64,000 nt of DNA, from positions 62,001-126,000 of IMG/VR virus record IMGVR_UViG_3300047994_000374, one strand, 5' to 3'. The notes under the pieces were generated by a model, which worked only from the letters and a program-made list of their open reading frames with translations, was not told the DNA's origin and searched no databases. The position numbers and the translations under genes were made by a program. The stretch's first letter is position 1, and every line of letters begins with the position of its first letter. This document shows positions 767 to 29,769 of the stretch, in pieces.

Positions 767-866
767 ATGTATATCCTACTTCTTTCTTATTTGTTATTGT
801 TTGTGAGACTTGATTATTCTTGTCTCGAATTGTTATTGTACTTCTAATTTTTATGAAATGGGAAAT

Positions 867-1103
867 TTAATACTTATAAGTGTTACCAGGCGCATAAGAT
901 AAATCGTAATATCCAATCAGCTGGGCGAATTGTCTTCGGTCTTCTTTACCGAAATCCAGCATAGCAAGGTCGTTCATATTGATCCCACCATGGTCCAACA
1001 GATATTGAACCATCTTATTGGCTTTGAATCGCAACGTGCCGTGCTCATCATAAACAATGGGTTGAGGCGGATGCTTCTGCCTCTTTGTGGGCTTGCCTCT
1101 CAT
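867..1103 (-). CDS. Hypothetical phage protein
   Basis: ORF track; 4-bp overlap with 1100-1456. Confidence 0.7.
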   Translation of the reverse strand: MRGKPTKRQKHPPQPIVYDEHGTLRFKANKMVQYLLDHGGINMNDLAMLDFGKEDRRQFAQLIGYYDLSYAPGNTYKY

Positions 1104-1456
1104 TCGTTATCTCCATTTAACATTAACTCCATAAGTTCAGGCGAGATTGGATCGACATCATCCAGTTCAGCTGAATCAAGATTAGGCAAGCTATCAATAA
1201 GCTTTTGAAGGTTCTTGGCGCCCTCCGTCTCTTCAAATGGAACAACAAGCTTATATGTTTTACCATATGCTGTAATGGTTTCAGGGGCAGGCAAGTCGCT
1301 CATCAAATTAATTCGCCGAGTATGCTTTCGTTCTGATGCTTTATTAATGGGAAAGGAACTATTCTCCACAATTTTAATCGCTTCCTCTGCATGGCTAGCA
1401 TCGACGTCAATAAACGCTTCGTATTCTGTTGTGACTCGAATTTTAAATAATTTCAT
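1100..1456 (-). CDS. Hypothetical protein
   Basis: ORF track; AAGGA upstream; tiles with neighbours. Confidence 0.7.
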   Translation of the reverse strand: MKLFKIRVTTEYEAFIDVDASHAEEAIKIVENSSFPINKASERKHTRRINLMSDLPAPETITAYGKTYKLVVPFEETEGAKNLQKLIDSLPNLDSAELDDVDPISPELMELMLNGDNE

Positions 1457-1465
1457 TTCGTTCCT

Positions 1466-2050
1466 TTAATGTCCATAGTTCAATCCAATCATATAAGTCT
1501 CGCCCTTATAAACGAACTCTTCATCCCAATATCCGCAACAACCGTGAGCCTTCAACTTATTGTATCGATGCCTTTGATTGCGCTTTGACTTCATTGCCAC
1601 TCGATAATTATCTTGGCACGAATCATCTGGACCCAATTCTTTGATTACCTTCCATGCCCAATCAACAATCTCTTTTGGCAAGTCTCGTTCCCAATCAAAC
1701 TGGGCGCGCTTCATGAGTTCGTAGTTGCGCTGCTGTTTCAACACATCTACCATATAACGAGCGATATGACTTTGACTTTCTGCAAATGAACGGAAGATCA
1801 ATCGCGTCAAGTTACTAAAAGCCTTGGGAGAAATATCGGCAGCCATGACACCGAACAAAGGTGTTAAACTATGAATCCAACGCCATTGATGCCAGCTCTT
1901 CCAATGACCGCATTCAGCTACAATCATAAGCTTATTGTAGTATTTATCTTTGTTGTAACACACATCGACAGAGCCAACGGGCAGGTTCTTCGGATTAAGG
2001 AACCACTCCCACTCATAAGCTTCACATCCTTTACAATATTCGCCAGCCAT
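1466..2050 (-). CDS. Hypothetical phage protein (C-terminal GCCG...GLNYGH motif)
   Basis: 194-aa ORF; 1-bp overlap with 2050-2286. Confidence 0.7.
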   Translation of the reverse strand: MAGEYCKGCEAYEWEWFLNPKNLPVGSVDVCYNKDKYYNKLMIVAECGHWKSWHQWRWIHSLTPLFGVMAADISPKAFSNLTRLIFRSFAESQSHIARYMVDVLKQQRNYELMKRAQFDWERDLPKEIVDWAWKVIKELGPDDSCQDNYRVAMKSKRNQRHRYNKLKAHGCCGYWDEEFVYKGETYMIGLNYGH

Positions 2051-2286
2051 CAGGTTTTGAATGGGATGTTAGGGGTTTGGACTTTACGAAAACTTGTGGT
2101 GGTGAATTGGGGTTGGAAGACAGTATGATCTTCAATGGACCGAAGAATAATAATAGATCGTCCTTCAATTGAATTCTCTTGGACCCGAACCTTGTCTTCC
2201 GCGTCTCTGGCACAATTGGCTTGGACTTTGATATTCCGAACGCCATCTGAAGTTGTATGTTGGTATTGCACTGTATAATTTTTCAC
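2050..2286 (-). CDS. Hypothetical protein
   Basis: ORF track, tiles with neighbours. Confidence 0.55.
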   Translation of the reverse strand: MKNYTVQYQHTTSDGVRNIKVQANCARDAEDKVRVQENSIEGRSIIILRSIEDHTVFQPQFTTTSFRKVQTPNIPFKT

Positions 2287-2423
2287 GGCTTAAATTTCCC
2301 CTCGAGTGCTGCATTAGCAATTTCAATTAAAGTATTTGTTGATGCATAATCCATTTTGACAATAAGTTTAAGAGCCTCTTTCAAAATAAAGATCTCTTTC
2401 ATTTTTTCCAAATTGCCATGGTT

Positions 2424-2624
2424 TTACTCCAATGCGCTGCGTAGAATTTCGGCAACGATCTGGTTCTCAACCTCTGCCACGATACGCTTTCGATTGTTGT
2501 TTTCTTTGCGGCAAACAAAGAATGTTCCGCCACCATTGGGCTGGACGATTGTAAGGTCTGGCTCTTTACTGTAATTGCCAGTATAGATCAATCCAACCCC
2601 ACCACTTCCACTTGCTGCGCTCAT
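2424..2624 (-). CDS. Hypothetical protein
   Basis: ORF track, ATGA overlap. Confidence 0.6.
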   Translation of the reverse strand: MSAASGSGGVGLIYTGNYSKEPDLTIVQPNGGGTFFVCRKENNNRKRIVAEVENQIVAEILRSALE

Positions 2625-2806
2625 TTGTTCTTCTCCATAATTTTGCGTTCGTTACCTTTGTTTTTACAATACTCGGCGCAGGATTTCATTTCGCGTTCCA
2701 TCCTATACCAATCATCAGATGACATGGGTTTATATGCCCCATCAATACAGATACGCTTCCTAAAATCGTCAAGAGCGTGCATCAATTCAAAAAAGTAATT
2801 AATCAT
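2621..2806 (-). CDS. Hypothetical protein
   Basis: ORF track, tiles with neighbours. Confidence 0.55.
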   Translation of the reverse strand: MINYFFELMHALDDFRKRICIDGAYKPMSSDDWYRMEREMKSCAEYCKNKGNERKIMEKNK

Positions 2807-2807
2807 T

Positions 2808-3065
2808 TTATTTAACTAAAATCAAATCTGTTTCAGGATTGTAAGCATATCGTAAATTACTTGGCTGCCATCGAACATCTACTTCGGGACCTACCTTTGC
2901 CGGATCATAATTAGGATCATCAGGCTTACAATTGTTATAATCAGTTGGTCCAATTACAATCCCGATGCAATCGCCAAACTCTTCTACATGATCATGACTG
3001 CCATTACGGAGCATGTTCTCTCGGCAAAAGAAAGACATCTTAACTTTATCACCAACCTTAATCAT
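2808..3065 (-). CDS. Hypothetical protein (SH3/KOW-like start MIKVGDKV)
   Basis: ORF track 2808-3221; start moved to ATG 3065 to avoid a long overlap with 3058-3288. Confidence 0.65.
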   Translation of the reverse strand: MIKVGDKVKMSFFCRENMLRNGSHDHVEEFGDCIGIVIGPTDYNNCKPDDPNYDPAKVGPEVDVRWQPSNLRYAYNPETDLILVK

Positions 3066-3288
3066 GGGAGTTACTTTTCTTCCACTCCAAGTATTGAGTA
3101 ATGGCTTTTGCAACCAACTCCGCTTGGTCTTCAAACATATTGATTCGAGCAATTTCTTTTCCACTACCACCATCAAGGCACCGAAGCTCAACCAGTTCGC
3201 CGGTTTCATCTGGACCGACAACGATCATCTCGCCACCTTCAGACCAAACTTCAAATTTAATATTTGTAACACTGAGATTTGATTTCAT
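3058..3288 (-). CDS. Hypothetical protein
   Basis: TCCCAT box 25 nt upstream of ATG. Confidence 0.7.
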   Translation of the reverse strand: MKSNLSVTNIKFEVWSEGGEMIVVGPDETGELVELRCLDGGSGKEIARINMFEDQAELVAKAITQYLEWKKSNSHD

Positions 3289-3324
3289 AATTTCTATTCT
3301 TGTTAGGCGTTAAATGGGAATGGT

Positions 3325-3609
3325 TTATTTTTTCCAACGAGGATGGTTTGGGTCTTTTTCCACGGAGAACTTCATTGTCTTGATATCATCGCCGCGCCGA
3401 ACAAGCTCCTCAAGAAATGCTGGAACATCTTCTCCACGACTATCTTTAAATACTGTGCGTCCAATATGATGATAAAGCCAATGACCATCCGCCGAGGTTT
3501 GTACGCCCAATGGAAAATAATACATAAGATCATTTTCTTTTCGCGACCAATAGATACTAAGCTTATCCAATACGCTCTTTCTCTTATTACTCATAATCCA
3601 TTTCTCCAA
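3325..3609 (-). CDS. Hypothetical protein
   Basis: ORF track; stop directly followed by the box of the next gene. Confidence 0.6.
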   Translation of the reverse strand: MEKWIMSNKRKSVLDKLSIYWSRKENDLMYYFPLGVQTSADGHWLYHHIGRTVFKDSRGEDVPAFLEELVRRGDDIKTMKFSVEKDPNHPRWKK

Positions 3610-3678
3610 TAGCCATAGCCAGTTGTTTCACAAGGAAAAGATAACCACTAACGATTGATTTGATCATAATAACTATTT

Positions 3679-4320
3679 CTATTGAATGGGATTACAAGTG
3701 CATTGATAGTCATGGCGGATATTACAATACTGTTGTAGGTCGCCACATGTAGGCTTATTATCAGTAGGGAATTCATTCAATCTCGGATTCATAATCAATT
3801 GACCTGGATTTAATTCGTGTCGCAAACCCATCGCATGCCCAGATTCGTGGGCACCAATTCCAAAAAGCATTGCAGCTTCAGTATAACCATACGTTTTAAA
3901 TTGCGATAAACTATCGAAGCCGGGGGCATAAATACTAGCCCCAATCTCACTATGGTTTAAATTAAAGCTATCATCCTCTTCATTGCAAAGCTCGGCAGAA
4001 GTATGGGTAATCGCAATAGCATCGCCCACCCCGCCGTTTGCCCGAATCCAAGGCACTGAAGCTTTATGAATAACGATCGTGCTCCAACCAACTTCACTTT
4101 CTTGTGGCAAAGAAAATGGCGAGACAATTTCAAAATAGAATGACGGAGCATAAAGACCAAGCTGTTCCCATGAAGAGATACCGCCTTCAAGCGCATGAAT
4201 TTCATCGGGGGTAAAGTCAGATGAGATCATTACTTCGTAGCTCGTCGGCAAACCTGAACTGGCGCAGGCATTTGTTGAGAGCGCAAGAATTGAAGCGAAG
4301 ATGATGAGAATGTTTTTCAT
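3679..4320 (-). CDS. Secreted/lipoprotein metzincin (matrixin-like) zinc metalloprotease
   Basis: Signal peptide; HESGHAMGLRH (HExxHxxGxxH) plus Met-turn IMNP; box 25 nt upstream; paralog of 27056-27643. Confidence 0.8.
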   Translation of the reverse strand: MKNILIIFASILALSTNACASSGLPTSYEVMISSDFTPDEIHALEGGISSWEQLGLYAPSFYFEIVSPFSLPQESEVGWSTIVIHKASVPWIRANGGVGDAIAITHTSAELCNEEDDSFNLNHSEIGASIYAPGFDSLSQFKTYGYTEAAMLFGIGAHESGHAMGLRHELNPGQLIMNPRLNEFPTDNKPTCGDLQQYCNIRHDYQCTCNPIQ

Positions 4321-4355
4321 ATCTATGGTTTGATTATAATTATGAATGGGAAAAT

Positions 4356-4390
4356 AAAAAAGCTCACAACCGATTTAAGATTGTGAACCT
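4356..4390 (-). terminator. Intrinsic terminator downstream of tRNA
   Basis: Minus strand AGGTTCACAA...TTGTGAGC followed by T6. Confidence 0.55.
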
Positions 4391-4423
4391 GAGTGTTAGT
4401 TTATTTGCAGCCTCGACATGATT

Positions 4424-4499
4424 TGGTAGGCGCCTCGAGATTCGAACTCGAACTGGATCGTGTTTAAGACGATTTTCTCTGCCGTTGGAATACGCGCCC
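4424..4499 (-). tRNA. tRNA-Leu(UAA), short variable loop, encoded CCA
   Basis: Folds by hand to a cloverleaf: anticodon arm ATCGT-CTTAAAC-ACGAT, T arm TCGAG-TTCGAAT-CTCGA, ACCA 3' end; 76 nt. Confidence 0.9.
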
Positions 4500-4506
4500 A
4501 TAATTA

Positions 4507-4806
4507 TTACTGTTCAGCCCTTATACGTAATGGATTGTCCAAAGATAAATGGGAAAATCTATTCTTATATTCTTTCATCGAGATGTCCAGTTGATCTTGA
4601 GTCAGATTATTTTCTGTTAAAAACGTCACATTAAAATCCATAATATATTCGAATGCCTGAAAGTGCGCTTCAGCTATTTGGCACACTAACTCTCCAGCCA
4701 ATTCATCACCTTTATTTTTCGAATGCAATAACAATTCTTTAGCCCGAGTTAAAGTCTTATGAATTATATCAAAGTTATTTTTATATTCAAGTTCAAAAGT
4801 ATTCAT
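4507..4806 (-). CDS. Hypothetical protein
   Basis: ORF track. Confidence 0.6.
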   Translation of the reverse strand: MNTFELEYKNNFDIIHKTLTRAKELLLHSKNKGDELAGELVCQIAEAHFQAFEYIMDFNVTFLTENNLTQDQLDISMKEYKNRFSHLSLDNPLRIRAEQ

Positions 4807-4986
4807 TAGTTACCAAAATCCAATAATTTACTCAATACCTTCTCTAACTTCTTCGCCGCATCATATGGATGATTTGCATAGACTTCAAGCTCGACTACTT
4901 CACTGATCACCTTGTCTCCATCAACACCTCCATCATTGAGACATTTCTCAACTGAAATGGGAATTGTAATTCTATAAGTAGCCATT

Positions 4987-5229
4987 CTATTCCTTCACAT
5001 GACAATAGCCGCTACGACCAAACTCATAGCGGACACTACACTTACAACATCCCATGCCGATACAATCGCAACCGCCAAAATATTCTCGCAAATACCTTGC
5101 AAAAACCCCTACCTCCTGAAAACAAAAAGCTAAACCTCTTTCAGCACAAGCCCGAGCAAGGTCATTATAGTTCTTATTCCATTGAGAACGAACAAGCATG
5201 GGACGAAGCTGATCGCGTGTATATTTCAT
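4987..5229 (-). CDS. Hypothetical Cys-rich protein
   Basis: ORF track, ATGA overlap. Confidence 0.6.
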   Translation of the reverse strand: MKYTRDQLRPMLVRSQWNKNYNDLARACAERGLAFCFQEVGVFARYLREYFGGCDCIGMGCCKCSVRYEFGRSGYCHVKE

Positions 5230-5651
5230 TCTCCGAATTCACTCTTCTTCAATGGTCCCTTATTCCAATTCGGATCGCTTCTAACTTTTTTAATCAGCTC
5301 CCCAATTTCTTCCGTTCGCTTTTTATCAGGACACATTTTCAATACTACCTTCTTTGGATTGTAATCGGAAACATATTGAATGAGTTGTTTGAATGCCGTT
5401 TCAGCTCCGAGCATTTTATAAATGGGAAGCAGTCCGAAGTTTTTACACTCAACGAATCCGCATTCTTTATAATCAGGCGCCGCATAAAAGTTTCCATCCA
5501 CAAAGATAAGATCATACTTCTTACACTTGGGCTTGATTACTTCACGACGAAACCTATTAGCCAGTTGTTTTAGGCTCTTCGTATAGTTATCGTTGAGTTG
5601 TTTAAGCTGGACGTGATATTTTTTCATAATGCTCCATCTTTCTTTTTTCAA
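5226..5651 (-). CDS. Hypothetical protein, paralog of 6307-6582
   Basis: Shared KxLAxxxRxEVIxPxCKKxxLxF; true start may be slightly downstream. Confidence 0.65.
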   Translation of the reverse strand: MKKERWSIMKKYHVQLKQLNDNYTKSLKQLANRFRREVIKPKCKKYDLIFVDGNFYAAPDYKECGFVECKNFGLLPIYKMLGAETAFKQLIQYVSDYNPKKVVLKMCPDKKRTEEIGELIKKVRSDPNWNKGPLKKSEFGE

Positions 5652-5776
5652 AAGTATTCATTGCGCCTACAATATCGGTATGTTTTACGAATCTTGATAG
5701 GCTCCACATAAGCATTGTCACGATAACTAAATTCTTTACTCATATTAGTATTCTCCTTTAATCTATTGAATGGGAA

Positions 5777-6310
5777 TTAAAATGACGGATCGAAATTGGG
5801 GTCAGGGTCAGGTTCAAGTCGAACTGTTTGATCGAATGACCACCAATACAATCCAAAACCCCAAGGCAAAGTAATTTCGCCCGTTTCAGAATACTCGCAC
5901 TTATTATAAAAAGCATGTAAAAGCTTTTTAGTAATTTCTTCTTCTGTAAGTGGCTTGACTTCAGGTTTTATTTTCTTCTTTAATTTGACTAAATCTCTAA
6001 CTGATACAAATTGTTCGGCACAACCCTTATCCCACTTAACATCAACATGCGTAAGTTTGTTGCAACCAAATCCAGCGAAGGCAGTGACAGCTCCTTTACA
6101 TCCCGAATCAATATCTTTTACTCTGTCACCGATTTTAAATTCTTTATTCGCTTTTCCTACATTAACTAAATCATTTACACTAATAAATGAGCTACTCCCG
6201 CCCAAGTCCCATACAACGGTAGCCATTAAATGATCAATTTTTTTAATGAACCCTTTGTATTTAGATCGGGTATGTTGAACGTAGTCACCAACTTTAAATT
6301 TGTTTTTCAT
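5777..6310 (-). CDS. Tandem SH3/KOW-like repeat protein
   Basis: Two FKxGDxV...G.V.....V.WD.G.....VxDL repeats; C-terminus shared with 7278-7700. Confidence 0.75.
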   Translation of the reverse strand: MKNKFKVGDYVQHTRSKYKGFIKKIDHLMATVVWDLGGSSSFISVNDLVNVGKANKEFKIGDRVKDIDSGCKGAVTAFAGFGCNKLTHVDVKWDKGCAEQFVSVRDLVKLKKKIKPEVKPLTEEEITKKLLHAFYNKCEYSETGEITLPWGFGLYWWSFDQTVRLEPDPDPNFDPSF

Positions 6311-6582
6311 TTTTTATTTTTTCTTGGATCATAATCGTCAACTAAAGTACTAAACATATTATAACTGGAACTATCATAATGCAAGGTGTCTAACATTTTA
6401 TCAATTTCTGGGTAGGAACCAAACTCTCCATTATAATCATAAAATTGACAACATTGAAAAACCAAATTAAGCTTTTTACAAGTCGGGATAATAACTTCTT
6501 TACGGTATTTTTTGGCTAATTTTTTAAAACCATTAGTAAGATTCTTTTCTAACTTAATGATTTCTCTTTCATACTTATTCAT
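6307..6582 (-). CDS. Hypothetical protein
   Basis: Box 25 nt upstream; paralog of 5226-5651. Confidence 0.7.
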   Translation of the reverse strand: MNKYEREIIKLEKNLTNGFKKLAKKYRKEVIIPTCKKLNLVFQCCQFYDYNGEFGSYPEIDKMLDTLHYDSSSYNMFSTLVDDYDPRKNKK

Positions 6583-6706
6583 GTTAATTATTACCTGTGT
6601 TTATTAAATGGGAAAATTTTATAGTCCATCATAATGCGAAGAACTAATCCAAGGACTGCTAAAGCACATACGCAGGTTGCAATAATGAATTGTAAAGTTT
6701 CGTTAG

Positions 6707-6979
6707 TCATAGGTACTCACGCACGCTTGTATATTTGAAGGTCGGATCGATTGAAGCCAAGAGTGTCTTATAATAATCAATCTGCTTCGAAAGTCCAGGG
6801 ATACTACAATATTTTTGATGACCCCTTATACTTACTTCTGGATCCGAAGTGCCACATTCATTACAGCGCCAATAAGGATTACCACCACCAATAGGGACAT
6901 GCATTTGATCCAATCTATTTTCAAGGAGACGAATTTTATTTCGAATTCGTTTTGCTGCTGGTATGTGATTTGCTTTCAT
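6707..6979 (-). CDS. Hypothetical protein with CxxC...HxxxC motif
   Basis: ORF track. Confidence 0.65.
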   Translation of the reverse strand: MKANHIPAAKRIRNKIRLLENRLDQMHVPIGGGNPYWRCNECGTSDPEVSIRGHQKYCSIPGLSKQIDYYKTLLASIDPTFKYTSVREYL

Positions 6980-23639: not shown

Positions 23640-23669
23640 AAAAAAGCCCGACCATTACAGTCAGGCTTT
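23640..23669 (-). terminator. Intrinsic terminator
   Basis: A6-GCCCGACCATTACAGTCAGGCTTT. Confidence 0.7.
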
Positions 23670-23678
23670 AATTACAGT

Positions 23679-23969
23679 TCAGATGTCAAGGGCGCAAAAC
23701 TGTTTGACCAAGATCTTGTGCTTGTAAACTTTGCACCAAGGACCACGACGAAACCAGCGCCCCGGACCACCATAAGAATCATACCAGCCCGTCAAGTCTT
23801 GTGCCAATTCGTTACGATCGGTCTCTTCATCAATCGGACCATAAACCGCCTCGACCGCTTTACGATCGTAGATGGCAATATGAGTGCAGGATTCGCCATC
23901 ATCATTAACTGTGCCAGACTTCAAGGGATTAATTGAGGGAAGGTCGACATATTCTTTATCGTGGCTCAT
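23679..23969 (-). CDS. Hypothetical protein
   Basis: Box 24 nt upstream. Confidence 0.7.
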   Translation of the reverse strand: MSHDKEYVDLPSINPLKSGTVNDDGESCTHIAIYDRKAVEAVYGPIDEETDRNELAQDLTGWYDSYGGPGRWFRRGPWCKVYKHKILVKQFCALDI

Positions 23970-24004
23970 ATGATTACCTGTCCTTAATATTAAATGGGAA
24001 TTGT

Positions 24005-24295
24005 TTAGCGTCCAATTTCAGTAATAAACTTTAGAGCTTGGCGCTTGGTGCTGAATTGCTGAAACTTTGAAGCCGTGTCAATGCTACCATCGGCATTAGC
24101 AAAGCGGACCGTAAAGAGGCGAGGCGAGCCATCATCGAATCGTTCCGAGGTAATGAAGTAACGACCAAAGTAGATCGGATTATACACGATCGACTTGAAA
24201 AAGCGCATGGTGTCTTTTGAAAACCAGTGCCCGCCAGAAGCCTTGTTTGCTTCCTGAATTTCGCGCATCGTATTGTAAACTTTGGGAGTGGGCAT
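24005..24295 (-). CDS. Hypothetical phage protein (WFSxDTMRFF motif)
   Basis: Start reassigned to ATG 24295, 24 nt after the box. Confidence 0.75.
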   Translation of the reverse strand: MPTPKVYNTMREIQEANKASGGHWFSKDTMRFFKSIVYNPIYFGRYFITSERFDDGSPRLFTVRFANADGSIDTASKFQQFSTKRQALKFITEIGR

Positions 24296-24522
24296 AATAT
24301 TCTCGCTATTGTTTATTAAATGGGAATTAGAATGCCCAGTACTTACAGCGATCGCAAGTATCATCACCAGGGTTTTGCGCCCCTAGGGAATGCTTACAGT
24401 GTTTGCAGGTAGGCTTAGGAATAGGGAGCCCATAACTATCGATTGCTTTTTTCGGGATAAGAAGCATATCCTTTGATTGTCTAATGTGGTAAATGGGAAT
24501 TTGGATCCTTGGTTTGGGCTTG

Positions 24523-24557
24523 TGGCGAGCTTATTGCTTTTTGCAAACATCATACCA
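24523..24557 (-). promoter_or_regulatory. Face-to-face sigma54-type elements
   Basis: Minus TGGTATGATGTTTGCA; plus TGGCGAGCTTATTGCT. Confidence 0.75.
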
Positions 24558-24574
24558 TATAACCAACTGACAAT

Positions 24575-24607
24575 AAAAAACCCGATCCATTATAGACCGG
24601 GTTTTTT
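24575..24607. terminator. Bidirectional intrinsic terminator
   Basis: A6-CCCGATC...GACCGGG-T6. Confidence 0.7.
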
Positions 24608-24877
24608 ATGCGGAGCGCCAACCATTCCTTTAAGTCGTCGTCGTGAGCATTGCCAGCTTGACAAGTATATCGTTTTATTTACAGCCCCATCACAATATAG
24701 GTTAAGAGAAACATACTGATACAACAGAGCACGCCACTAAAGACTTCATGTGCCATCATTCGTTTATCGTCGTTCATGTTATTACCTATTGAGATTATTA
24801 AAAGCCCTCTAACCCAAAAGATGAGCTAGAAGGCTTTAAAGAGTTAGATAAGGGCGATCCTAGTAAATTACAGGGAA

Positions 24878-25114
24878 TTACAGGGTAGAATATACGCGAC
24901 CCTTGGACCATACGCCCATCATTGACCCATCGCTTTGCTTTACCCCGACCCATTGCCATTCTTGAACGAACGCTAAATGATCCGCGAGGCTTGCACATTC
25001 AAGAGCCACTCGTTTATCCTTACGAAAGTCTCCGATGCGTTCATGGGTCGCGAGCGAATAAACCCCGAACGTCCGACCTTTCAAAGCTTTAACCGTTTGC
25101 ATAGTTATCTCCAA
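24878..25114 (-). CDS. Hypothetical protein
   Basis: ORF track; box upstream (likely start 25102). Confidence 0.6.
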   Translation of the reverse strand: MEITMQTVKALKGRTFGVYSLATHERIGDFRKDKRVALECASLADHLAFVQEWQWVGVKQSDGSMMGVWSKGRVYSTL

Positions 25115-25215
25115 TGGTATAGATTAAATGGGAAATGTTTGTGGCATGTTTATAATCGATTCTACGCTTTTTAAGGCTCCACGATTATTAACTTTATACA
25201 ATAACTCGAAGCTAT

Positions 25216-25231
25216 TGCAATGATAGTGCCA
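25216..25231 (-). promoter_or_regulatory. Consensus sigma54-type promoter (no mirror element)
   Basis: Minus TGGCACTATCATTGCA = TGGCAC-N5-TTGCA. Confidence 0.75.
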
Positions 25232-25260
25232 CAGCTATCCTAAAACCTTTACTCCCCTAA

Positions 25261-25455
25261 TCAATTGTAGGAATGGGAAAGATTAAAAACTTCGACCTTG
25301 AGCTTTCGTTCTGAGAAGTCTGAATAGGTCTCTTCCAATTCCCCGACCTTTGATTCCCAATATTCCCGAACCTCATTATCAGATCCACCTCCACTGTAAA
25401 GGGTCAGGAGGTTCATCTTGATCTCTTGAGCGAGCTTCTTATAATTCGTTTTCAT
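25261..25455 (-). CDS. Hypothetical protein
   Basis: Start reassigned to ATG 25455, 24 nt after the box. Confidence 0.65.
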   Translation of the reverse strand: MKTNYKKLAQEIKMNLLTLYSGGGSDNEVREYWESKVGELEETYSDFSERKLKVEVFNLSHSYN

Positions 25456-25499
25456 GATATACCCTATGGTAAATGTTAAATGGGAATTGTTTATAGGGC

Positions 25500-25694
25500 T
25501 TAATCTTTTTCCGTGCCACGCAAAAGATTGACCGCGCTCCAAAACCCATCATCAAAGCCCGCAAGGATATCGGCGACCTGTTTCTTTTTGAGCAATCCTT
25601 TTTCTAAATGGGATTGCAATTGAAGCTCATAGTTCTTTAGTGTCTCTTCCCGGATTCTCAAAACCTCAGATCGTTTCATTAGAGTATCCTCCAC
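25500..25694 (-). CDS. Hypothetical protein
   Basis: ORF track; likely start 25679 with GGAGG upstream. Confidence 0.65.
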   Translation of the reverse strand: MEDTLMKRSEVLRIREETLKNYELQLQSHLEKGLLKKKQVADILAGFDDGFWSAVNLLRGTEKD

Positions 25695-26087
25695 GAATGA
25701 ATAGTAAATGGGAAATAAGGAAGTTAGGCGTAAAGATTACTTAGTGGCTTTATAACCAAGAGCCATGCCAGCGACGAAACTACACATAACCCATGTCACG
25801 ACAACCGAGCCGAGTGTAAAAGCAACGCCCTGGACAAAATGCGACGTGAGGCCTGCGAGCGACAATCCAACGAGTAGAGCGATAATGATCTTCATGATAT
25901 CTCCTATAGGTATTATTAAATGGGAATTGTTTACTTTGAATTCATGCGGCGGATAATAAACTGAAGGACCGCATTCGCTTGTTTCATCTGGTTGAGTTTT
26001 AAAACGAAACCGTTCTTTTCGATCTGGCTCATATCCTTTTCTTATTCTTTTGATGAAATGGGAAATGCTCGTGTGTGTGGGTCTATG

Positions 26088-26122
26088 TGGCTGGCTCTTT
26101 GCTTATTGCACAACCCATACCA
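26088..26122 (-). promoter_or_regulatory. Face-to-face sigma54-type elements
   Basis: Minus TGGTATGGGTTGTGCA; plus TGGCTGGCTCTTTGCT. Confidence 0.7.
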
Positions 26123-26138
26123 CTTATCCACTGGACAT

Positions 26139-26175
26139 AAAAAAATCCCGATCAACTTAATGACCGGGATCCTTT
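26139..26175 (-). terminator. Intrinsic terminator
   Basis: A7-TCCCGATCA...TGACCGGGAT. Confidence 0.65.
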
Positions 26176-26713
26176 ACCTCACACTCCCGCCAAACTCAAA
26201 ACCTTATTGATCTCTTTCTCATAATCAGCCGCGGCGCCTTTAAGCCCCACCTTCTTTGCGGTTGCTGCCTGTTTACGAAGAAGCTCAACTCGGATGAAAA
26301 CTTGTGCATTGGTCATAGTAGTAGTAATATCCTTTGGTTATTATTAAATGGGATTATGGTTTAGATTGCACTTTACAAAGACTTTACGTACTCTTTTGAT
26401 CCATCCTGGTATTCAATGATCAAGACTTTATTACGATAATCTTGCGTCCTCCACTTCTTAACTTCTTTTGAGTCAACCTTCATGCCCGGTTCAAAAGTTC
26501 CAGGTCGCACCATTCGATCCATGATATCCTCCAAGGTTAATGATTAAATGGGAAAATGATATTATGAAACCACTGTAATTTAAGTATAGAACTGTTGTCT
26601 TTAAAAACCGCCCCTACAATCGATTATTAAAAGAAAAAGATATACTGACAAGGATCAGATCAAAAGCTCGTCTCAATTCATTTTCGCGACTGGAAACGGC
26701 ATATACTAATAAT

Positions 26714-26899
26714 TCAGCGAGCCGTTACTTTACCCGTAAGACATGCGAGATCAAAGCGCTCCTGAGAAAACTTAGGATTGTCTTGTCGAAAGAATACGGA
26801 GAAGCTGTCAATCAAAAGTCGAAGCTCATCAGGGGAAGCTCCACACTTCTTATGGTTGTGGATGATAGAGGCTGCGGCGATCATATGAGTTTTCGTCAT
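26714..26899 (-). CDS. Small protein, duplicate of 27680-27868
   Basis: DNPKFSQxRFDLACLTGKVTAR shared. Confidence 0.75.
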   Translation of the reverse strand: MTKTHMIAAASIIHNHKKCGASPDELRLLIDSFSVFFRQDNPKFSQERFDLACLTGKVTAR

Positions 26900-26958
26900 T
26901 GTAGTTATTATGGGGTTATTGTATTAAATGGGAATTGGGTTATTAGGGATTATGGGTC

Positions 26959-26994
26959 TGGTATAGGGTTTGCTTAATTGCGAATACTATGCCA
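26959..26994 (-). promoter_or_regulatory. Face-to-face sigma54-type elements
   Basis: Minus TGGCATAGTATTCGCA; plus TGGTATAGGGTTTGCT. Confidence 0.75.
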
Positions 26995-27013
26995 TTTGAC
27001 TTTTTACAACTAT

Positions 27014-27041
27014 AAAGAGCCCATAAACAACAGGGCTCTTT
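27014..27041. terminator. Intrinsic terminator
   Basis: AAAGAGCCC...GGGCTCTTT. Confidence 0.65.
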
Positions 27042-27055
27042 ATATAAACCACGCT

Positions 27056-27643
27056 TCAATTACAAGGGCAGGTAACTTTCCTAAGAGAGCAGTATTGATC
27101 CAAGTCGGCACAAGTAGGAGAATGTGCCGCGGTAGGGTAATCGGGATTCATCAAAGTACCTGATCCGGTATGCTTCAATCCGCAAGCGTGCCCCGTTTCA
27201 TGAGCAATGCTAACCGAATACATATCAGAATCGACGTCTGACATATTCTGCAGATAGATAGTGGCTCCTATCTGATCTGGCGAATAAGAGTCATTATACT
27301 CGTAGGATTCAAGCTCACCTTGAACCGAAGTGTAGGCAATGGTCCCACTATCACCATGCGCCACAATGTTAGCCTTAGTATCTTTACGGATCACAATCGT
27401 TGACCAACCTACATGAGCCTCATTAGGCAAAGAAAAAGCCGGAACGATCGTATAACTAAAAACCGGACCATCTTTGAATTGTGACCAGGATGACATCTCT
27501 GATTCAATAACGCTCACCTCTTCCGAAGAAAAGTCGCTTGAGATCTGGACATCATAACCACCAGGCAATCCCGACTCAGCGGCACAACCAACTGAGCCAA
27601 TTGCGAAGGAGCCGAGAACCGTCATCATCAAGAGCGTTTTCAT
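27056..27643 (-). CDS. Lipoprotein metzincin (matrixin-like) metalloprotease
   Basis: Lipobox SVGC; HETGHACGLKH plus LMNP. Confidence 0.8.
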   Translation of the reverse strand: MKTLLMMTVLGSFAIGSVGCAAESGLPGGYDVQISSDFSSEEVSVIESEMSSWSQFKDGPVFSYTIVPAFSLPNEAHVGWSTIVIRKDTKANIVAHGDSGTIAYTSVQGELESYEYNDSYSPDQIGATIYLQNMSDVDSDMYSVSIAHETGHACGLKHTGSGTLMNPDYPTAAHSPTCADLDQYCSLRKVTCPCN

Positions 27644-27679
27644 TATTGATTAGCCTTTTAGTTATATTGAATATGGGAA

Positions 27680-27868
27680 TTAGCGAGCCGTAACTTTACC
27701 CGTAAGACATGCGAGATCAAACCGATCTTGGGAAAACTTCGGGTTATCGTTACGGAAGAGGGTAGAGAAGCTGTCGATCAAAAGTCGTACCTGTTTATCT
27801 GTTGCACCATTCTTCTTGTGGTTGTGGATGATGGCAGCGGCTTCAATCATAAACTTTTTGGTTAGCAT
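27680..27868 (-). CDS. Small protein, duplicate of 26714-26899
   Basis: High protein and DNA identity to 26714-26899. Confidence 0.75.
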   Translation of the reverse strand: MLTKKFMIEAAAIIHNHKKNGATDKQVRLLIDSFSTLFRNDNPKFSQDRFDLACLTGKVTAR

Positions 27869-27935
27869 GGTGGTAGTGATTGGGGTTTATTGTTTATTGA
27901 ATGGGAATTGTAATAGCTCTTTGGTTCTGGTATTG

Positions 27936-27971
27936 TGGATCGGATCATGTAATATAGTAAACACTATACCA
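27936..27971 (-). promoter_or_regulatory. Degenerate face-to-face sigma54-type elements
   Basis: Minus TGGTATAGTGTTTACT; plus TGGATCGGATCATGT; same position in the cassette as the others. Confidence 0.55.
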
Positions 27972-27988
27972 ACCATACGCAAGACAAT

Positions 27989-28018
27989 AAAAAGCCCCGA
28001 CCATTACAGTAGGGCTTT
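27989..28018 (-). terminator. Intrinsic terminator
   Basis: A5-GCCCCGACCATTACAGTAGGGCTTT. Confidence 0.65.
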
Positions 28019-28026
28019 AGAACAAT

Positions 28027-28230
28027 TCAATCGATCGTCAGTTCCCCCATGATCAATGCATTCTCCGTGCCAATAACCGTATCCTCTTCGCAAGCCTCGC
28101 AATGATAATCCTCAGCGTCCGGCTCGACACCACCGCAAGTGAATTCATTGCAGGTAGTACAATGCCCGTCGTATTCTTCGGCAGTAATCGTTTTCATGAT
28201 CATTATCCTTTTTATTATAATCACATACAT
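28027..28230 (-). CDS. Zinc-ribbon protein, paralog of 15360-15551
   Basis: EFTCGGVEPDAE...CEAC...GTENAL shared. Confidence 0.7.
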   Translation of the reverse strand: MYVIIIKRIMIMKTITAEEYDGHCTTCNEFTCGGVEPDAEDYHCEACEEDTVIGTENALIMGELTID

Positions 28231-28234
28231 ACAC

Positions 28235-28468
28235 TTACACGCATAGCTTACTTATAGTGGGGGAAAAGCTAAACACTTGAACCATCGTAGAAGACTTCAA
28301 TCCAAGGATCGTTTCAACTCCACTGGAACTTTTGGCAGCAATCTTGGTATAGTTTCCTTTATCCGTGGAGATGTCGCGAATGTCCTCCACCATATATTCC
28401 GTGCCAAGAAAGATAAAGCGGACCCCAACATCTAATTCAGAGCTTCGTCGGTTGAGCATCATAACCAT
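28235..28468 (-). CDS. Hypothetical protein
   Basis: Box upstream; first gene of a cassette. Confidence 0.65.
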   Translation of the reverse strand: MVMMLNRRSSELDVGVRFIFLGTEYMVEDIRDISTDKGNYTKIAAKSSSGVETILGLKSSTMVQVFSFSPTISKLCV

Positions 28469-28515
28469 ACCCTATTCTTATAAGTAATGGGAAACGAGAA
28501 ACTCTTTGGTGCGCG

Positions 28516-28551
28516 TGGTATAAGGATTGTATAATAGCAAAGCTCATGCCA
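28516..28551 (-). promoter_or_regulatory. Face-to-face sigma54-type elements
   Basis: Minus TGGCATGAGCTTTGCT; plus TGGTATAAGGATTGTA. Confidence 0.75.
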
Positions 28552-28567
28552 TACAATCAAACCACAT

Positions 28568-28594
28568 AAAAAGCCCGGCAATAAAAGCCGGGCT
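28568..28594 (-). terminator. Intrinsic terminator
   Basis: A5-GCCCGGC...GCCGGGCT. Confidence 0.75.
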
Positions 28595-28607
28595 CTCTTA
28601 TGCTACG

Positions 28608-28796
28608 CTAAAAGACGTTAGGTGCGCACCACAACTCTATAGTGTCGTTCAAGCTTTCGAGCGCGCGGGAACGATCCTGATCGGTAGATAACGGATCGTA
28701 TTGCGTCGCGTTATAGTGATTGATTGCGTCTAACAGATCTTCGGCTCCGGTCAAAAGCATTCTCCGCAAACGTATAACCTTCTCAGTTGGTTTCAT
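28608..28796 (-). CDS. Hypothetical protein
   Basis: ORF track; GGAG upstream. Confidence 0.6.
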   Translation of the reverse strand: MKPTEKVIRLRRMLLTGAEDLLDAINHYNATQYDPLSTDQDRSRALESLNDTIELWCAPNVF

Positions 28797-28823
28797 GTTA
28801 TCTCCACAATAGTTATAGCTTTT

Positions 28824-29018
28824 TCATGATTCTTCTGAATCCTTGAAGGATCCATCGCTCCACAAGAAAACACCCGTGTAAGTCATTGCTTGCCCATCAT
28901 TATCAACATCATCACCTTCCCCGTAGATAATCAATTGCCCATAATTATCTCGCTCCAAAGAAAGGGGATCCGCACCATCAAGAAGATCATTCAACTCTTT
29001 TTTCGTGTATGTTTTCAT
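28824..29018 (-). CDS. Small acidic protein, paralog of 11160-11342
   Basis: Start reassigned to ATG 29018 after the box and AGGAG. Confidence 0.7.
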   Translation of the reverse strand: MKTYTKKELNDLLDGADPLSLERDNYGQLIIYGEGDDVDNDGQAMTYTGVFLWSDGSFKDSEES

Positions 29019-29071
29019 GGCATCTCTCCTAATCTTTTGAGGTAAATGGGAATAGCTTTTATTAGGGTAAC

Positions 29072-29106
29072 CGGCTTGTTTTTTGCTATTAGCTATAATC
29101 ATACCC
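29072..29106 (-). promoter_or_regulatory. Face-to-face sigma54-type elements
   Basis: Minus GGGTATGATTATAGCT; plus CGGCTTGTTTTTTGCT. Confidence 0.6.
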
Positions 29107-29123
29107 ACTATCTTTTGCCCAAT

Positions 29124-29159
29124 AAAAAAGCCGATCCCTTTCGAGACCGACTTCTTTTC
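29124..29159 (-). terminator. Intrinsic terminator
   Basis: A6-GCCGATC...GACCGAC-TTCTTTT. Confidence 0.55.
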
Positions 29160-29400
29160 TTTCAATCCTCCGAATGAAAGCGAGCGAAACAGTTTTCCCA
29201 ACCTTGCCAGTAATTGGCTTCGTAGTCCCCGTTATCGTCAGGAAACCGCGGCTCAACGCCATCAAGGCAATCGGTGTAACCTTGGTTGTATGCTTCGCGA
29301 TTCATCTTGACGGTTTTCATGATGGTATTCCTTTTGAGAGGGGAGGGAAAAAGAAACCGGGTAACTACCTTGAACTTTTATAAGAAATGGGATGAGCCGA

Positions 29401-29562
29401 TCAATAGCCTAACCAAGCCAGAAACTCACTCGCCTCATACTACTCATGATCCCCCATCTCACAAAGAAACTCCGCCATGTCGCAACAATGGTCCTTGATC
29501 TCTTTCATGGCGCGGGTCTTTGAGATGCGAAGGTCTTTGGCTGATTCGGAGTAGGTGGGCAT
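29401..29562 (-). pseudogene. Small gene with internal TAG (MPTYSESAK...GDHE*YEASEFLAWLGY*)
   Basis: ATG 29562 is 24 nt from a box; the frame continues plausibly past the TAG at 29440-29442. Confidence 0.45.
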
Positions 29563-29769
29563 AATAATAGGGCTAAAGAATAAGGAATGGGATAAGGACA
29601 ACATAAGATAACCTCCGCTTCGTTCACCCAATAGAGAATAATAGAGTGAAATGTAGGTAAGGAGGGGATAAAGGGATTGGAGCTGAATAAGAATTGTAAA
29701 TGATTGTAAAGTTTTATTATAGTTTTTTATATTGTAAATGATTGTAAATAAGTTATTATATTGTTTGAA

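What the first reader, a model, noticed from the sequence alone, without database searches (positions are those of the whole stretch)
850..29600. A TTCCCATT box sits at a near-fixed 23-26 nt before the start codon of dozens of genes: candidate phage-specific translation or expression signal
Seen: W-TCCCAT-T(T/C) on the coding strand (ATGGGA on +) occurs over 50 times in 1-29.6 kb, mostly just after the previous stop codon. Gaps from TCCCAT to ATG, counted by hand: 25 nt (starts 3288, 4320, 6582, 10960, 11680, 15551, 17947, 20110, 21540, 22256, 23220, 23525); 24 nt (14088, 17623, 18202, 21945, 23969, 24295, 25455, 29562, 50362); 23 nt (21239); 26 nt (7700). Where genes abut, the box is written inside the upstream CDS at the same spacing (17973 in 'IFPI', 18508 in 'LIPIY'). 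It flips to the + strand between + strand genes (42791-42801), so it follows transcription direction rather than replichore. In the sigma54 cassettes it lies about 30-40 nt inside the predicted transcript. Many of these genes have a weak or absent Shine-Dalgarno. Inference: spacing tied to the AUG, just upstream of the 30S footprint, suggests an RNA element (binding site for S1 or a phage factor, or an endonucleolytic processing site) that marks phage mRNAs; the window also encodes IF-1 and RF2. Alternative: a single-box promoter for a phage sigma/RNAP, favoured by the box at 4346 lying right after a terminator.
Basis: partly seen in the sequence, partly recalled or inferred. Interest (0 to 1): 0.9.

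Follow-up and report, generated by a model that had tools for sequence, protein, structure and literature searches.

The report
Promoter-like box heading phage gene cassettes
An uncultured 394-kb phage from moss puts the same 11-letter box (WT-TCCCAT-TYA) 24-25 letters before the first gene of about fifty small gene cassettes. It is most likely this phage's own promoter for one class of genes, an ordinary kind of signal with a new sequence, rather than a new translation signal.

Summary
TCCCAT occurs 106 times in the window against 38 expected. There are 72 copies on the gene strand of 1-30 kb and 6 on the other strand. Thirty-one copies lie exactly 24 or 25 nt before an ATG-started ORF (P about 1e-31).

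The window is part of a 394-kb moss-metagenome phage contig. The boxes fill a roughly 38-kb, higher-GC array of small orphan genes.

- The box heads operon-like units. Genes that overlap their upstream neighbour almost never have it.
- It directly follows terminators, with no room for another promoter.
- One copy precedes a tRNA gene.
- It is rare before the phage's other genes.
- Its leaders are unstructured.
- Its core is nearly invariant.
- In a 92%-identical relative, blocks of homology start at the box, so box plus gene behaves as a shuffled cassette.

Best reading (about 0.55): a class-specific single-box promoter for a phage-specific transcription apparatus, which also serves as a recombination linker. 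The closest known cases are jumbo-phage early promoters and T4-type PeSLs.

An RNA-level translation or stability signal is not excluded (about 0.2). A cleavage site is unlikely. No RNA data were available, and no polymerase or sigma gene was found in the 110 kb inspected.

The parts
1..29600 (-). Window part of the box-rich array of small, mostly orphan genes. The array continues beyond window position 1 for about 8.5 kb, to contig position about 53.5 kb. GC is 41-45%, against 32-37% in the rest of the contig.
   Evidence: There are 72 TCCCAT on this strand and 6 on the other. GC profile. Array proteins have almost no Pfam or PHROG function.
23994..24004 (-). Typical consensus box (AATTCCCATTTAA) directly after the upstream stop codon, with ATG at 23969 (gap 24). 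Forty-six boxes in 1-29.6 kb have an ATG-ORF of at least 35 codons at gap 23-32 (one of them, at 3069, has no consensus flanks). Box-to-ATG pairs: 3319>3288, 4351>4320, 6613>6582, 7732>7700, 8358>8324, 9171>9140, 10991>10960, 11711>11680, 13776>13740, 14118>14088, 14635>14604, 15582>15551, 15931>15897, 16286>16254, 16501>16470, 17653>17623, 17978>17947, 18232>18202, 18513>18482, 19144>19114, 19910>19878, 20141>20110, 21268>21239, 21571>21540, 21975>21945, 22287>22256, 22920>22886, 23251>23220, 23556>23525, 24325>24295, 24498>24467, 25133>25102, 25485>25455, 25713>25679, 25925>25895, 26353>26316, 26553>26522, 26933>26899, 27678>27643, 27906>27868, 28492>28462, 29051>29018, 29592>29562.
17973..17978 (-). 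Box embedded in the 3' end of the upstream ORF (17957-18202), 25 nt before ATG 17947. The same arrangement occurs at 18508-18513 and 6608-6613.
4549..4554 (-). Consensus box (TTTCCCATTTA) inside the 3' end of ORF 4507-4806. It lies 49 nt upstream of tRNA-Leu(UAA) at 4499-4424.
4346..4375 (-). Weak hairpin plus T-run, immediately followed by box 4351-4346, then ATG 4320 (gap 25).
50362..50442 (-). Outside the array: a 13-bp terminator hairpin (50442-50411) and T-run, then about 12 nt, then box 50392-50387, then 24 nt, then ATG 50362 (FGE-sulfatase-like gene, 279 aa).
42755..42827 (+). Plus-strand copy. After the stop codon comes hairpin 42755-42790, then box TTCCCATTTA (42793-42802), then ATG 42825 at gap 25. 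This lies upstream of small ORFs and an HNH-like homing-endonuclease-like gene (42995-43777).
22377..22570 (-). Composite unit: terminator 22570-22544, sigma54-like site 22523-22509, box 22463-22458 (45 nt after TTGC), short ORF at gap 25, then terminator 22406-22377. The next box, at 22287, lies about 90 nt after that terminator.
28462..28598 (-). Terminator 28598-28568, sigma54-like site 28551-28537, box 28492-28487 (44 nt after TTGC), ATG 28462.
23525..23669 (-). Terminator 23669-23643, followed 87 nt later by box 23556-23551 and ATG 23525.

Best explanation
The box is the core of a class-specific, single-element promoter of this 394-kb phage.

Proposed mechanism (inferred, not shown). A phage-specific transcription apparatus recognises WT-TCCCAT-TYA together with the A/T-rich stretch that follows. 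That apparatus could be a phage-encoded or virion-borne RNA polymerase, or host core enzyme with a phage specificity factor. It starts RNA a few bases downstream. The resulting leaders of roughly 13-23 nt carry only a weak Shine-Dalgarno. Leaders piling up at the shortest workable length give the 24-25 nt spacing.

Shown by sequence. Each box heads a cassette of one to a few small genes in a hyperplastic, higher-GC region. Because the box is the only sequence shared by all cassettes, it also marks the points where cassettes are inserted, lost or swapped between related phages.
For: 1. The box is strictly co-oriented with genes: 73 sites against 2 at 14 bits, with 1.8 expected. It flips with the plus-strand genes.
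2. It marks the heads of operon-like units. With JGI gene calls, 32 of 65 genes with an intergenic gap of at least 30 nt have it, against 2 of 47 genes that abut or overlap the upstream gene. Many of the remaining boxes precede small ORFs that the gene caller missed.
3. It comes directly after terminator-like hairpins with no room for another promoter: 50442-50411 then box 50392 then ATG 50362, and the hairpin and T-run before box 4351. Strong terminators at 23669-23643 and 22406-22377 are each followed by a box within about 90 nt.
4. A full-consensus box lies 49 nt upstream of tRNA-Leu, inside the preceding CDS. A tRNA needs transcription, not translation.
5. It is class-specific. Sixty-two of 87 sites in 110 kb lie within 30 kb. 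It is almost absent from the nucleotide-metabolism and structural-looking genes.
6. Sigma70-type sites are not enriched in the array (50 against 46.3 expected). Good TTGACA-N16/17-TACATT sites occur in the low-GC part. So the array otherwise lacks recognisable promoters over about 38 kb.
7. The anatomy is that of phage-polymerase promoters: a near-invariant core with almost no one-mismatch variants, a weak A-rich stretch upstream, a T-Y-A and an A/T-rich, G-free stretch downstream, and no second box. Jumbo-phage early promoters are likewise roughly 10-nt highly conserved single boxes. They are found bioinformatically before early operons and are intolerant of single changes (PMC7598289, PMC5312081).
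8. There is no RNA structure. Leaders have mean MFE -2.1 kcal/mol and z = 0.24. Pairing of the box is 0.26, against 0.23 in controls.
9. In the 92%-identical relative L160 there are five boxes in 1957 nt at gaps 24-25. Homology to the window starts at the first base of a box (L160 845 = window 17653) or 2 nt before one (1887 = 16288). It ends 4 and 21 nt before others, with different cassettes in between. This is the behaviour of T4-type promoter cassettes (PMC2839356).
Against: - No transcript 5' ends could be examined. No RNA run was listed, and the reads laid were DNA contigs.
- No RNA polymerase or sigma gene appears among precomputed Pfam hits of the genes called in contig 32.7-143.4 kb. 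About 283 kb of the contig was not seen.
- A spacing to the ATG as tight as 24-25 nt is unusual for promoters. It is not explained by recent duplication of leaders: best pairwise leader identity is 13.1 of 21, against 12.25 +/- 0.22 after column shuffling.
- Two boxes lie 44-45 nt downstream of sigma54-like promoter sequences that themselves follow terminators. There the box would sit inside a transcript and would not be needed as a promoter.
- After terminators 23669-23643 and 22406-22377 there are about 85 nt in which another, unrecognised promoter could lie.
Confidence: 0.55

Rival explanations
1. RNA-level signal. UUCCCAUUYA in the 5' leader is a single-stranded binding site for a phage or host factor (a protein such as an S1- or KH-like RNA binder, or a complementary RNA or rRNA segment). 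The factor recruits ribosomes to, represses, or stabilises one class of phage mRNAs.
For: - The distance to the ATG is constrained (31 sites at 24-25 nt). This holds although the leaders are otherwise diverged.
- The box is kept at that distance even at the cost of coding constraints in the upstream ORF.
- Leaders are unstructured and G-poor, so the box would be accessible.
- Shine-Dalgarno sequences are weak.
- Two boxes lie inside transcripts predicted from sigma54-like sites.
- The phage encodes IF-1 and a release factor. Huge phages are proposed to redirect translation (PMC7162821).
Against: - The box is absent from most of the phage's genes, including those around IF-1.
- Box genes have the same Shine-Dalgarno strength as box-less coupled genes.
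- One copy precedes a tRNA.
- Copies sit immediately after terminators, where a transcript would have to begin.
- The gap distribution has a hard lower edge (23-24) and a tail to 32. That fits a minimal leader better than an exact register.
- No candidate binder was identified.
Confidence: 0.2
2. Endonucleolytic processing site. Long polycistronic RNAs are cut at or next to the box to give monocistronic mRNAs with defined 5' ends.
For: - The box is repeated at nearly every intergenic gap of a one-directional array with few terminators.
- A copy lies between an ORF and a tRNA.
- Precedents exist for sequence-specific phage RNases, for example T4 RegB cutting at GGAG (my own knowledge).
Against: - At least five consensus boxes lie inside the upstream ORF, 16-47 nt before its stop codon: 17978, 18513, 6613, 4554 and L155:1586. 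Cutting there would leave the upstream message without a stop codon.
- There is no hairpin or other structure of the kind RNase III-type sites use.
- Copies directly after terminators have nothing upstream to be processed from.
Confidence: 0.05
3. DNA site without promoter activity. The box is an operator for a regulator, or mainly a recombination or linker site at which gene cassettes are exchanged. Transcription would come from elsewhere, for example the sigma54-like sites.
For: - Homology blocks between the window and L160 begin or end at or just before boxes.
- The relative in run X7 is mosaic, with short blocks.
- Sigma54-like sites at 29805, 28551, 25231 and 22523 could drive long transcripts.
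Against: - The box has no dyad symmetry and no integron-type inverted-repeat architecture.
- A pure recombination site need not keep a fixed distance to the ATG, nor a fixed orientation relative to a lone gene elsewhere in the genome (50392, 42794).
- Cassette boundaries coincide with gene boundaries anyway, so the junction evidence does not single out the box.
Confidence: 0.1
4. Host-type promoter part. TTCCCA is a -35-like hexamer, or a MotA-type activator box, that works with a -10-like element just before the ATG.
For: The consensus scan scored a few TTCCCA-N16-18-(G/C)ATAAT combinations. A weak A-(A/T)-T-A pattern lies at -6 to -3 from the ATG.
Against: - The geometry fails. With the box at -32 to -27 from the ATG and a 16-18 nt spacer, the -10 hexamer would end at about -4. 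The start site would then fall on or after the start codon.
- The purine-rich Shine-Dalgarno-like element at -12 to -8 would not be transcribed.
- Sigma70-like sites are not enriched in the array.
Confidence: 0.03

Closest known systems
Early promoters of RNA-polymerase-encoding jumbo phages (phiKZ, AR9, phiR1-37), recognised by the virion RNA polymerase
   Same: A single, roughly 10-13-nt, highly conserved box with no -35 partner. It is detectable purely by over-representation upstream of many early operons, and intolerant of single changes. The start site is reported about 6 nt downstream of the element (PMC7598289, PMC5312081). Here the box is one-directional, heads small-gene units in a 394-kb phage, and has a near-invariant core.
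   Different: Those motifs are AT-rich (AR9: AAATATATATTAT-N6-G). This one has a CCC core. No multisubunit polymerase genes were found in the 110 kb inspected, and the rest of the contig was not seen. No start sites are known. The 24-25 nt spacing to the ATG is not a described property of those promoters.
T7-type single-subunit RNA polymerase promoters
   Same: One contiguous element made of an A/T-rich upstream part, a specific core, and a TA-rich part before the start (my own knowledge of the T7, T3 and SP6 promoters). The copies are very highly conserved. They are repeated before gene groups, with few terminators.
   Different: The conserved part here is shorter (about 11 nt plus weak flanks, against about 23 nt). 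No T7-like polymerase gene was seen. There is no conserved G at a putative +1.
PeSL promoter cassettes of T4-type phages (mobile regulatory cassettes)
   Same: Repeated expression signals precede orphan genes in hyperplastic regions. Differences between close relatives are insertions, deletions or replacements of signal-plus-ORF modules, bounded by the repeated signal (PMC2839356).
   Different: PeSLs are roughly 100-bp composites of a sigma70-like early promoter and a terminator stem-loop. Here the shared element is 11-20 nt, is not sigma70-like, and usually has no stem-loop. In most units the stop codon of the previous gene abuts the box. Mini-circle formation was not tested.
T4 late promoters (gp55) and other -10-only promoters of phage sigma factors
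   Same: A single short box suffices and is specific to a temporal gene class (my own knowledge).
   Different: The sequence is unrelated to TATAAATA. No gp55-like or sigma gene was identified.
Translational enhancers and repressor sites in phage leaders (T7 gene 10 epsilon, S1-binding A/U tracts, T4 RegA sites)
   Same: The element lies in the region just upstream of the Shine-Dalgarno, at a constrained distance from the AUG, in an unstructured leader.
   Different: Known enhancers are A/U-rich and degenerate, or overlap the AUG (my own knowledge). None is an invariant C-rich hexamer shared by about 50 genes. The copies before a tRNA and directly after terminators do not fit.
Integron gene cassettes (attC sites)
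   Same: One-directional array of small orphan ORFs separated by a repeated element, with cassette-wise variation between relatives.
   Different: attC sites are 3' of the ORF, imperfect inverted repeats of 55-140 nt, and need an integrase (my own knowledge). The box is 5' of the ORF, 11 nt long and asymmetric. No integrase gene was seen nearby.

Membership tests
Jumbo-phage virion-RNAP early promoters | Over-represented single conserved box of about 10 nt upstream of many co-oriented operons, with no -35 element | tested here: met
   Logo. At 14 bits, 73 sites on the gene strand, 2 on the other, 1.8 expected. Operon-head position shown.
Jumbo-phage virion-RNAP early promoters | Genome encodes split beta/beta'-like multisubunit RNA polymerases | tested here: inconclusive
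   No RNA polymerase Pfam hit among genes called in contig 32.7-143.4 kb. About 283 kb was not inspected. Divergent subunits often escape Pfam.
Jumbo-phage virion-RNAP early promoters | Primary transcript 5' ends a fixed few nt downstream of the box, early in infection and independent of protein synthesis | not testable with these tools
   No RNA run was listed. The reads laid were DNA contigs only.
Jumbo-phage virion-RNAP early promoters | AT-rich consensus | tested here: not met
   The core is TCCCAT, with an invariant CCC.
T7-type single-subunit RNAP promoters | Genome encodes a T7-like RNA polymerase | tested here: inconclusive
   No RNA polymerase Pfam hit was listed among genes called in the 110 kb inspected.
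T7-type single-subunit RNAP promoters | About 20-nt contiguous conserved element reaching the start site, with a conserved initiating purine | tested here: inconclusive
   Strong conservation covers only 11 nt, with weak flanks. A is found 48/72 times at +8 and 43/72 at +11. No start site is known.
T4-type PeSL mobile regulatory cassettes | Repeated promoter-bearing motif flanking orphan genes in a hyperplastic region | tested here: met
   The array is made of orphan genes. The box precedes each unit.
T4-type PeSL mobile regulatory cassettes | Indels and replacements between close relatives are bounded by the motif | tested here: met
   L160 against the window: block ends lie 0, 2, 4 and 21 nt upstream of boxes. 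This rests on one relative of 1957 nt, and the boundaries also coincide with gene boundaries.
T4-type PeSL mobile regulatory cassettes | Sigma70-like -35/-10 promoter plus terminator stem-loop in each motif | tested here: not met
   No -35/-10 pair. Terminator-like hairpins are not enriched (16 against 16.2 expected) and precede only a few boxes.
Leader translational enhancer or repressor site | Element is part of the mRNA | not testable with these tools
   This needs 5'-end mapping. It is only predicted for the two boxes downstream of sigma54-like sites.
Leader translational enhancer or repressor site | Fixed register to the start codon or Shine-Dalgarno | tested here: met
   Thirty-one of 50 positioned boxes are at gap 24-25. 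The distribution is one-sided, with a tail to 32.
Leader translational enhancer or repressor site | Associated only with translated genes | tested here: not met
   A consensus box lies 49 nt upstream of tRNA-Leu.
Integron attC | Imperfect inverted repeat 3' of each ORF, with an integrase nearby | tested here: not met
   The element is asymmetric, 11 nt long and 5' of the ORFs. Leaders are unstructured. No integrase Pfam hit was found in the array.

The most novel reading that the evidence does not exclude
The box is read on the RNA. It would be a sequence-specific leader tag (UUCCCAUUYA, 24-25 nt before the AUG) through which a factor of this huge phage selects one class of weakly Shine-Dalgarno-led mRNAs for ribosome loading or for protection. 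That would be a virus-specific translation-initiation code in a phage that also carries IF-1 and a release factor.
Probability: 0.15. Interest if true: 0.85.

Novelty: new member of a known kind. Interest (0 to 1): 0.42.

Why it matters
If the promoter reading holds, it gives a ready-made transcription map of about 50 units for the accessory-gene region of an uncultured 394-kb phage. It also gives a handle for finding the polymerase or specificity factor that reads a C-rich single box. And it extends beyond T4-type phages the idea that repeated expression signals double as linkers for shuffling orphan genes.

The unusually sharp spacing to the start codon suggests that these transcripts have minimal leaders. 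That bears on how weakly Shine-Dalgarno-led mRNAs are translated.

If the minority reading holds and the box acts on the RNA, it would be direct evidence for the proposed, still untested, redirection of translation by huge phages.

Tried and rejected
- Transcript evidence. No RNA run holding the region was listed. The single read-laying run could use only DNA contigs and showed no molecule ends.
- Scan of IMG/VR with the 15-mer AATTCCCATTTAATA.
- Two-box scan of IMG/VR. It gave 26 loci. Only the two from this contig are real arrays. The others are antisense coding matches.
- Relatives carrying the array's FtsK-like ATPase at 60-63% identity (L122-L128), and relatives of the DUF2786 protein at 40-55% identity (L157-L159, L161). 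They have neither the box nor any comparably enriched word. The box is therefore specific to this lineage, and no comparative co-variation with a polymerase could be made.
- Homologues of the 299-aa array protein. The closest is 50% identical, in an unrelated 67%-GC contig.
- Cultured or annotated relatives. None turned up by DNA or protein search of INPHARED.
- Walking the contig with all 12 look-ups (32.7-143.4 kb). No RNA polymerase or sigma hit was found.
- Three unknown window proteins checked in the ESM Atlas. They look like an HD phosphohydrolase and HNH-like endonucleases, not sigma factors.
- Host clues. IF-1 homologues are uncultured only. The Bacteroidota -7 motif is not enriched.
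- Hairpin or anti-Shine-Dalgarno pairing of the box. Rejected by folding.
- Rfam. No hits in the window or near box-led non-coding stretches.
- Literature search by the motif. It returned only primer matches.
- Reading the box as a -35 hexamer or MotA-type box. Rejected on geometry.

Full report
**What the window is.** A 39-nt probe and three protein look-ups place the window at positions 62,001-126,000 of a 394,192-bp contig. The contig is IMGVR_UViG_3300047994_000374, also held as ENA ERZ12293633 scaffold_73_c1. DNA runs that hold it are moss metagenomes.

The gene content is that of a huge phage:
- a release factor (44874-45962)
- IF-1 (56622-56846)
- an intein-containing IMPDH
- ThyX
- a DNA methylase
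- homing endonucleases
- two tRNAs in the stretches inspected

No cultured or annotated phage resembles it.

TCCCAT occurs 106 times, against 37.8 +/- 5.2 in shuffles. In 1-30 kb, 72 copies lie on the minus strand, which carries nearly all genes there, and 6 on the plus strand.

Aligning the 72 copies gives W-T-TCCCAT-T-Y-A-n-t-A. T is found 53/72 times at -1, T 65/72 at +6, T or C 63/72 at +7, and A 48/72 at +8. There is a weak aaACAAT stretch upstream and no second element further up.

To avoid circularity I fetched the public gene calls for 50.8 kb of the contig and merged them. There are 88 sense and 7 antisense copies. Fifty of the 88 have an ATG-ORF of at least 35 codons starting 20-34 nt downstream, against 12.3% for a random position (P = 3e-23). 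Thirty-one are at 24 or 25 nt, against 1.75% (P = 7e-32). Among all hexamers, only the box and its overlapping sub-words show such a peak.

A 16-nt weight matrix at 14 bits finds 73 sites on the gene strand of 110 kb, 2 on the other strand, and 1.8 per strand in shuffles. One-mismatch variants are almost absent; TCCCCAT before start 10592 is one.

**Where the boxes are.** They fill an array of small genes all read in one direction. The array runs from window position about 29.6 kb past position 1 to contig position about 53.5 kb, roughly 38 kb in all. Its GC is 41-45%, against 32-37% elsewhere.

Forty-five array proteins gave four Pfam families, three of them domains of unknown function, and eight unannotated PHROGs. 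Outside the array the box is sparse but keeps its rules:
- before an FGE-sulfatase-like gene, at 50392 (gap 24)
- before an HD-domain gene (L155 20042, gap 27)
- before L166 15461 (gap 24)
- flipped on the plus strand at 42794, before small ORFs and a homing-endonuclease-like gene (gap 25)

**What it marks.** With the public gene calls, 32 of 65 genes preceded by an intergenic gap of at least 30 nt have a box at 20-34 nt. Only 2 of 47 genes that abut or overlap their upstream neighbour have one. Many boxes without a called start precede small ORFs that the caller missed but other callers or ORF analysis find. So the box heads operon-like units of one to a few genes.

Usually the previous stop codon lies 1-8 nt before the box. 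Where there is no gap, the box is written into the end of the upstream ORF at the same distance from the next ATG (17978, 18513, 6613).

Aligned on the ATG, the leaders show only a weak purine-rich Shine-Dalgarno at -12 to -8 and an A/T spacer. G is almost absent from -39 to -17. Shine-Dalgarno strength is the same in box genes as in box-less coupled genes: 24% against 22% with a core of at least 4 nt, and about 35-38% with none. Leaders are unstructured, and the box is no more paired than in controls.

**Evidence that separates the models.**
1. A 13-bp terminator hairpin with a T-run at 50442-50411 is followed after about 12 nt by box 50392, and 24 nt later by ATG 50362. Box 4351 follows a hairpin and T-run directly. 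Nothing else fits between terminator and gene. The strong terminators at 23669-23643 and 22406-22377 are each followed by a box within about 90 nt.
2. A full-consensus box (TTTCCCATTTA) lies 49 nt upstream of tRNA-Leu, inside the preceding ORF.
3. The box is class-specific rather than phage-wide. The low-GC part has good sigma70-like sites (TTGACA-N16/17-TACATT at 42492 and 52585). The array has no excess of such sites (50 against 46.3).
4. At least five consensus boxes lie 16-47 nt before the stop codon of an upstream ORF. A cut there would create non-stop messages, which argues against a processing site.
5. Read as a -35 hexamer or an activator box with a -10 element before the ATG, the geometry puts the start site on or beyond the start codon and leaves the Shine-Dalgarno untranscribed.

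**Evidence pointing the other way.** Two boxes lie 44-45 nt after intergenic sigma54-like sites (TGGCAT-N5-TTGC at 28551 and 22523) that themselves follow terminators. If those are promoters, the box there is inside the transcript.

The spacing is not inherited from recent duplication. The 21 nt before the ATG are barely more alike than column-shuffled leaders (13.1 against 12.25 +/- 0.22 of 21). So the distance is held by selection.

The distribution is one-sided: 23:1, 24:11, 25:20, 26:4, 27:2, 28:6, then singles to 32. That looks like a pile-up at a minimal leader length rather than an exact register.

**Cassettes.** A 1957-nt contig from another sample (L160) encodes a 92%-identical DUF2786 protein. 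It has five boxes, each 24-25 nt before an ATG. Its homology to the window is in blocks:
- L160 3-112 matches window 17782-17673.
- L160 845-1605 matches window 17653-16890 and begins at the first T of TCCCAT.
- L160 1887-1957 matches window 16288-16217 and begins 2 nt before a box.

Different box-plus-gene units lie in between. The 90-95% relative in run X7 is likewise mosaic.

More distant relatives (40-63% identity in two marker proteins) have small-gene arrays but no box and no comparable motif. A two-box scan of IMG/VR found no other array. The signal is therefore young and lineage-specific. It behaves like the promoter cassettes (PeSLs) that mediate orphan-gene shuffling in T4-type phages (PMC2839356), although it lacks their sigma70-like promoter and stem-loop.

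**Conclusion.** The most economical reading is a single-box, class-specific promoter for a phage-specific transcription apparatus. Transcripts would start shortly after the box and carry minimal leaders.

This is what is described for jumbo phages with their own polymerases. There, a roughly 10-nt highly conserved box, intolerant of single changes, is found by over-representation before early operons, with the start site about 6 nt downstream (PMC7598289, PMC5312081). Membership in that family is not shown. The motif is not AT-rich. No polymerase or sigma gene was seen in the 110 kb inspected, and 283 kb remains unread. No 5' ends could be examined.

I give the promoter reading about 0.55. The others I rate as follows:
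- an RNA-level binding site for translation or stability: about 0.2
- a DNA site without promoter activity: about 0.1
- a processing site: about 0.05
- a host-type promoter part: about 0.03

The RNA-level reading would be the interesting one, given the proposal that huge phages redirect translation (PMC7162821). One 5'-end mapping experiment would decide.

Noticed in passing
window 30613-37604 (-): Twenty-two tandem paralogous genes of about 100 aa, mostly overlapping by 4 nt. Each has an N-terminal MNCPxC...C...H zinc-ribbon-like motif and a conserved C-terminal KLxAFL. No Pfam family matches. Similar runs of about 100-aa genes occur at L155 13692-17476.
   Followed up: partly
window 29791-29805, 28537-28551, 25217-25231, 22509-22523 (-): Intergenic sigma54-like sites (TGGCAY-N5-TTGC) sharing a further conserved ATACATACCA-like stretch about 15 nt downstream. 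Two sit directly after strong terminators. The pattern with one mismatch is found 12 times, against 3 expected. Two other matches (15391-15405, 28058-28072) are inside paralogous coding sequence. No enhancer-binding protein gene was seen.
   Followed up: partly
window 1-30000 compared with 30001-64000; L155: The box array has 41-45% GC, while the rest of the contig has 32-37%. A 299-aa array protein (20340-21239) belongs to a large unnamed family (365 hits). Its nearest member, at 50% identity, lies in a 67%-GC contig beside AcrVA2-like and Peptidase_M78 genes. This suggests imported accessory or anti-defence genes.
   Followed up: partly
window 56855-59041 (+): An IMP dehydrogenase gene interrupted by an intein with a homing-endonuclease Hint domain. 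It sits in an operon with IF-1 (56622-56846), a SET-domain protein (54686-55177), an RNase T-like exonuclease, an N6/N4 DNA methylase and ThyX.
   Followed up: no
window 43780-44859 (-), 42995-43777 (+), 51702-52571 (-): Three homing-endonuclease-like genes. One is GIY-YIG with NUMOD3 and HTH domains. Two are HNH-like by language-model and structure similarity only. One of them flanks the release-factor gene.
   Followed up: partly
window 29700-29770 (-): An AT-rich non-coding region with direct repeats of TTTACAATCATTTACAAT, at the upstream edge of the array, just downstream of the sigma54-like site at 29805.
   Followed up: no
L155 19430-19606 and 18079-18370: Consensus boxes directly after a stop codon, followed by about 170 and 290 nt without a called gene. 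The first stretch holds a long hairpin (CCCCGGT...ACCGGGG). There is no Rfam match, and its folding energy is not significant (z = -0.75).
   Followed up: partly
window 22377-22463 (-): A tiny unit between two terminators: sigma54-like site, box, then an ORF of under 40 codons at gap 25 that runs into the terminator hairpin. It could encode a small peptide or be a small RNA.
   Followed up: no
L161 (GCA_026931325.1, JAIXLO010000160.1, 383,427 bp): A 383-kb contig filed in NCBI as a Chitinophagales MAG carries a 40%-identical DUF2786 protein within a long array of small one-directional genes. It is probably a related huge phage binned as a bacterium. It has no box.
   Followed up: partly
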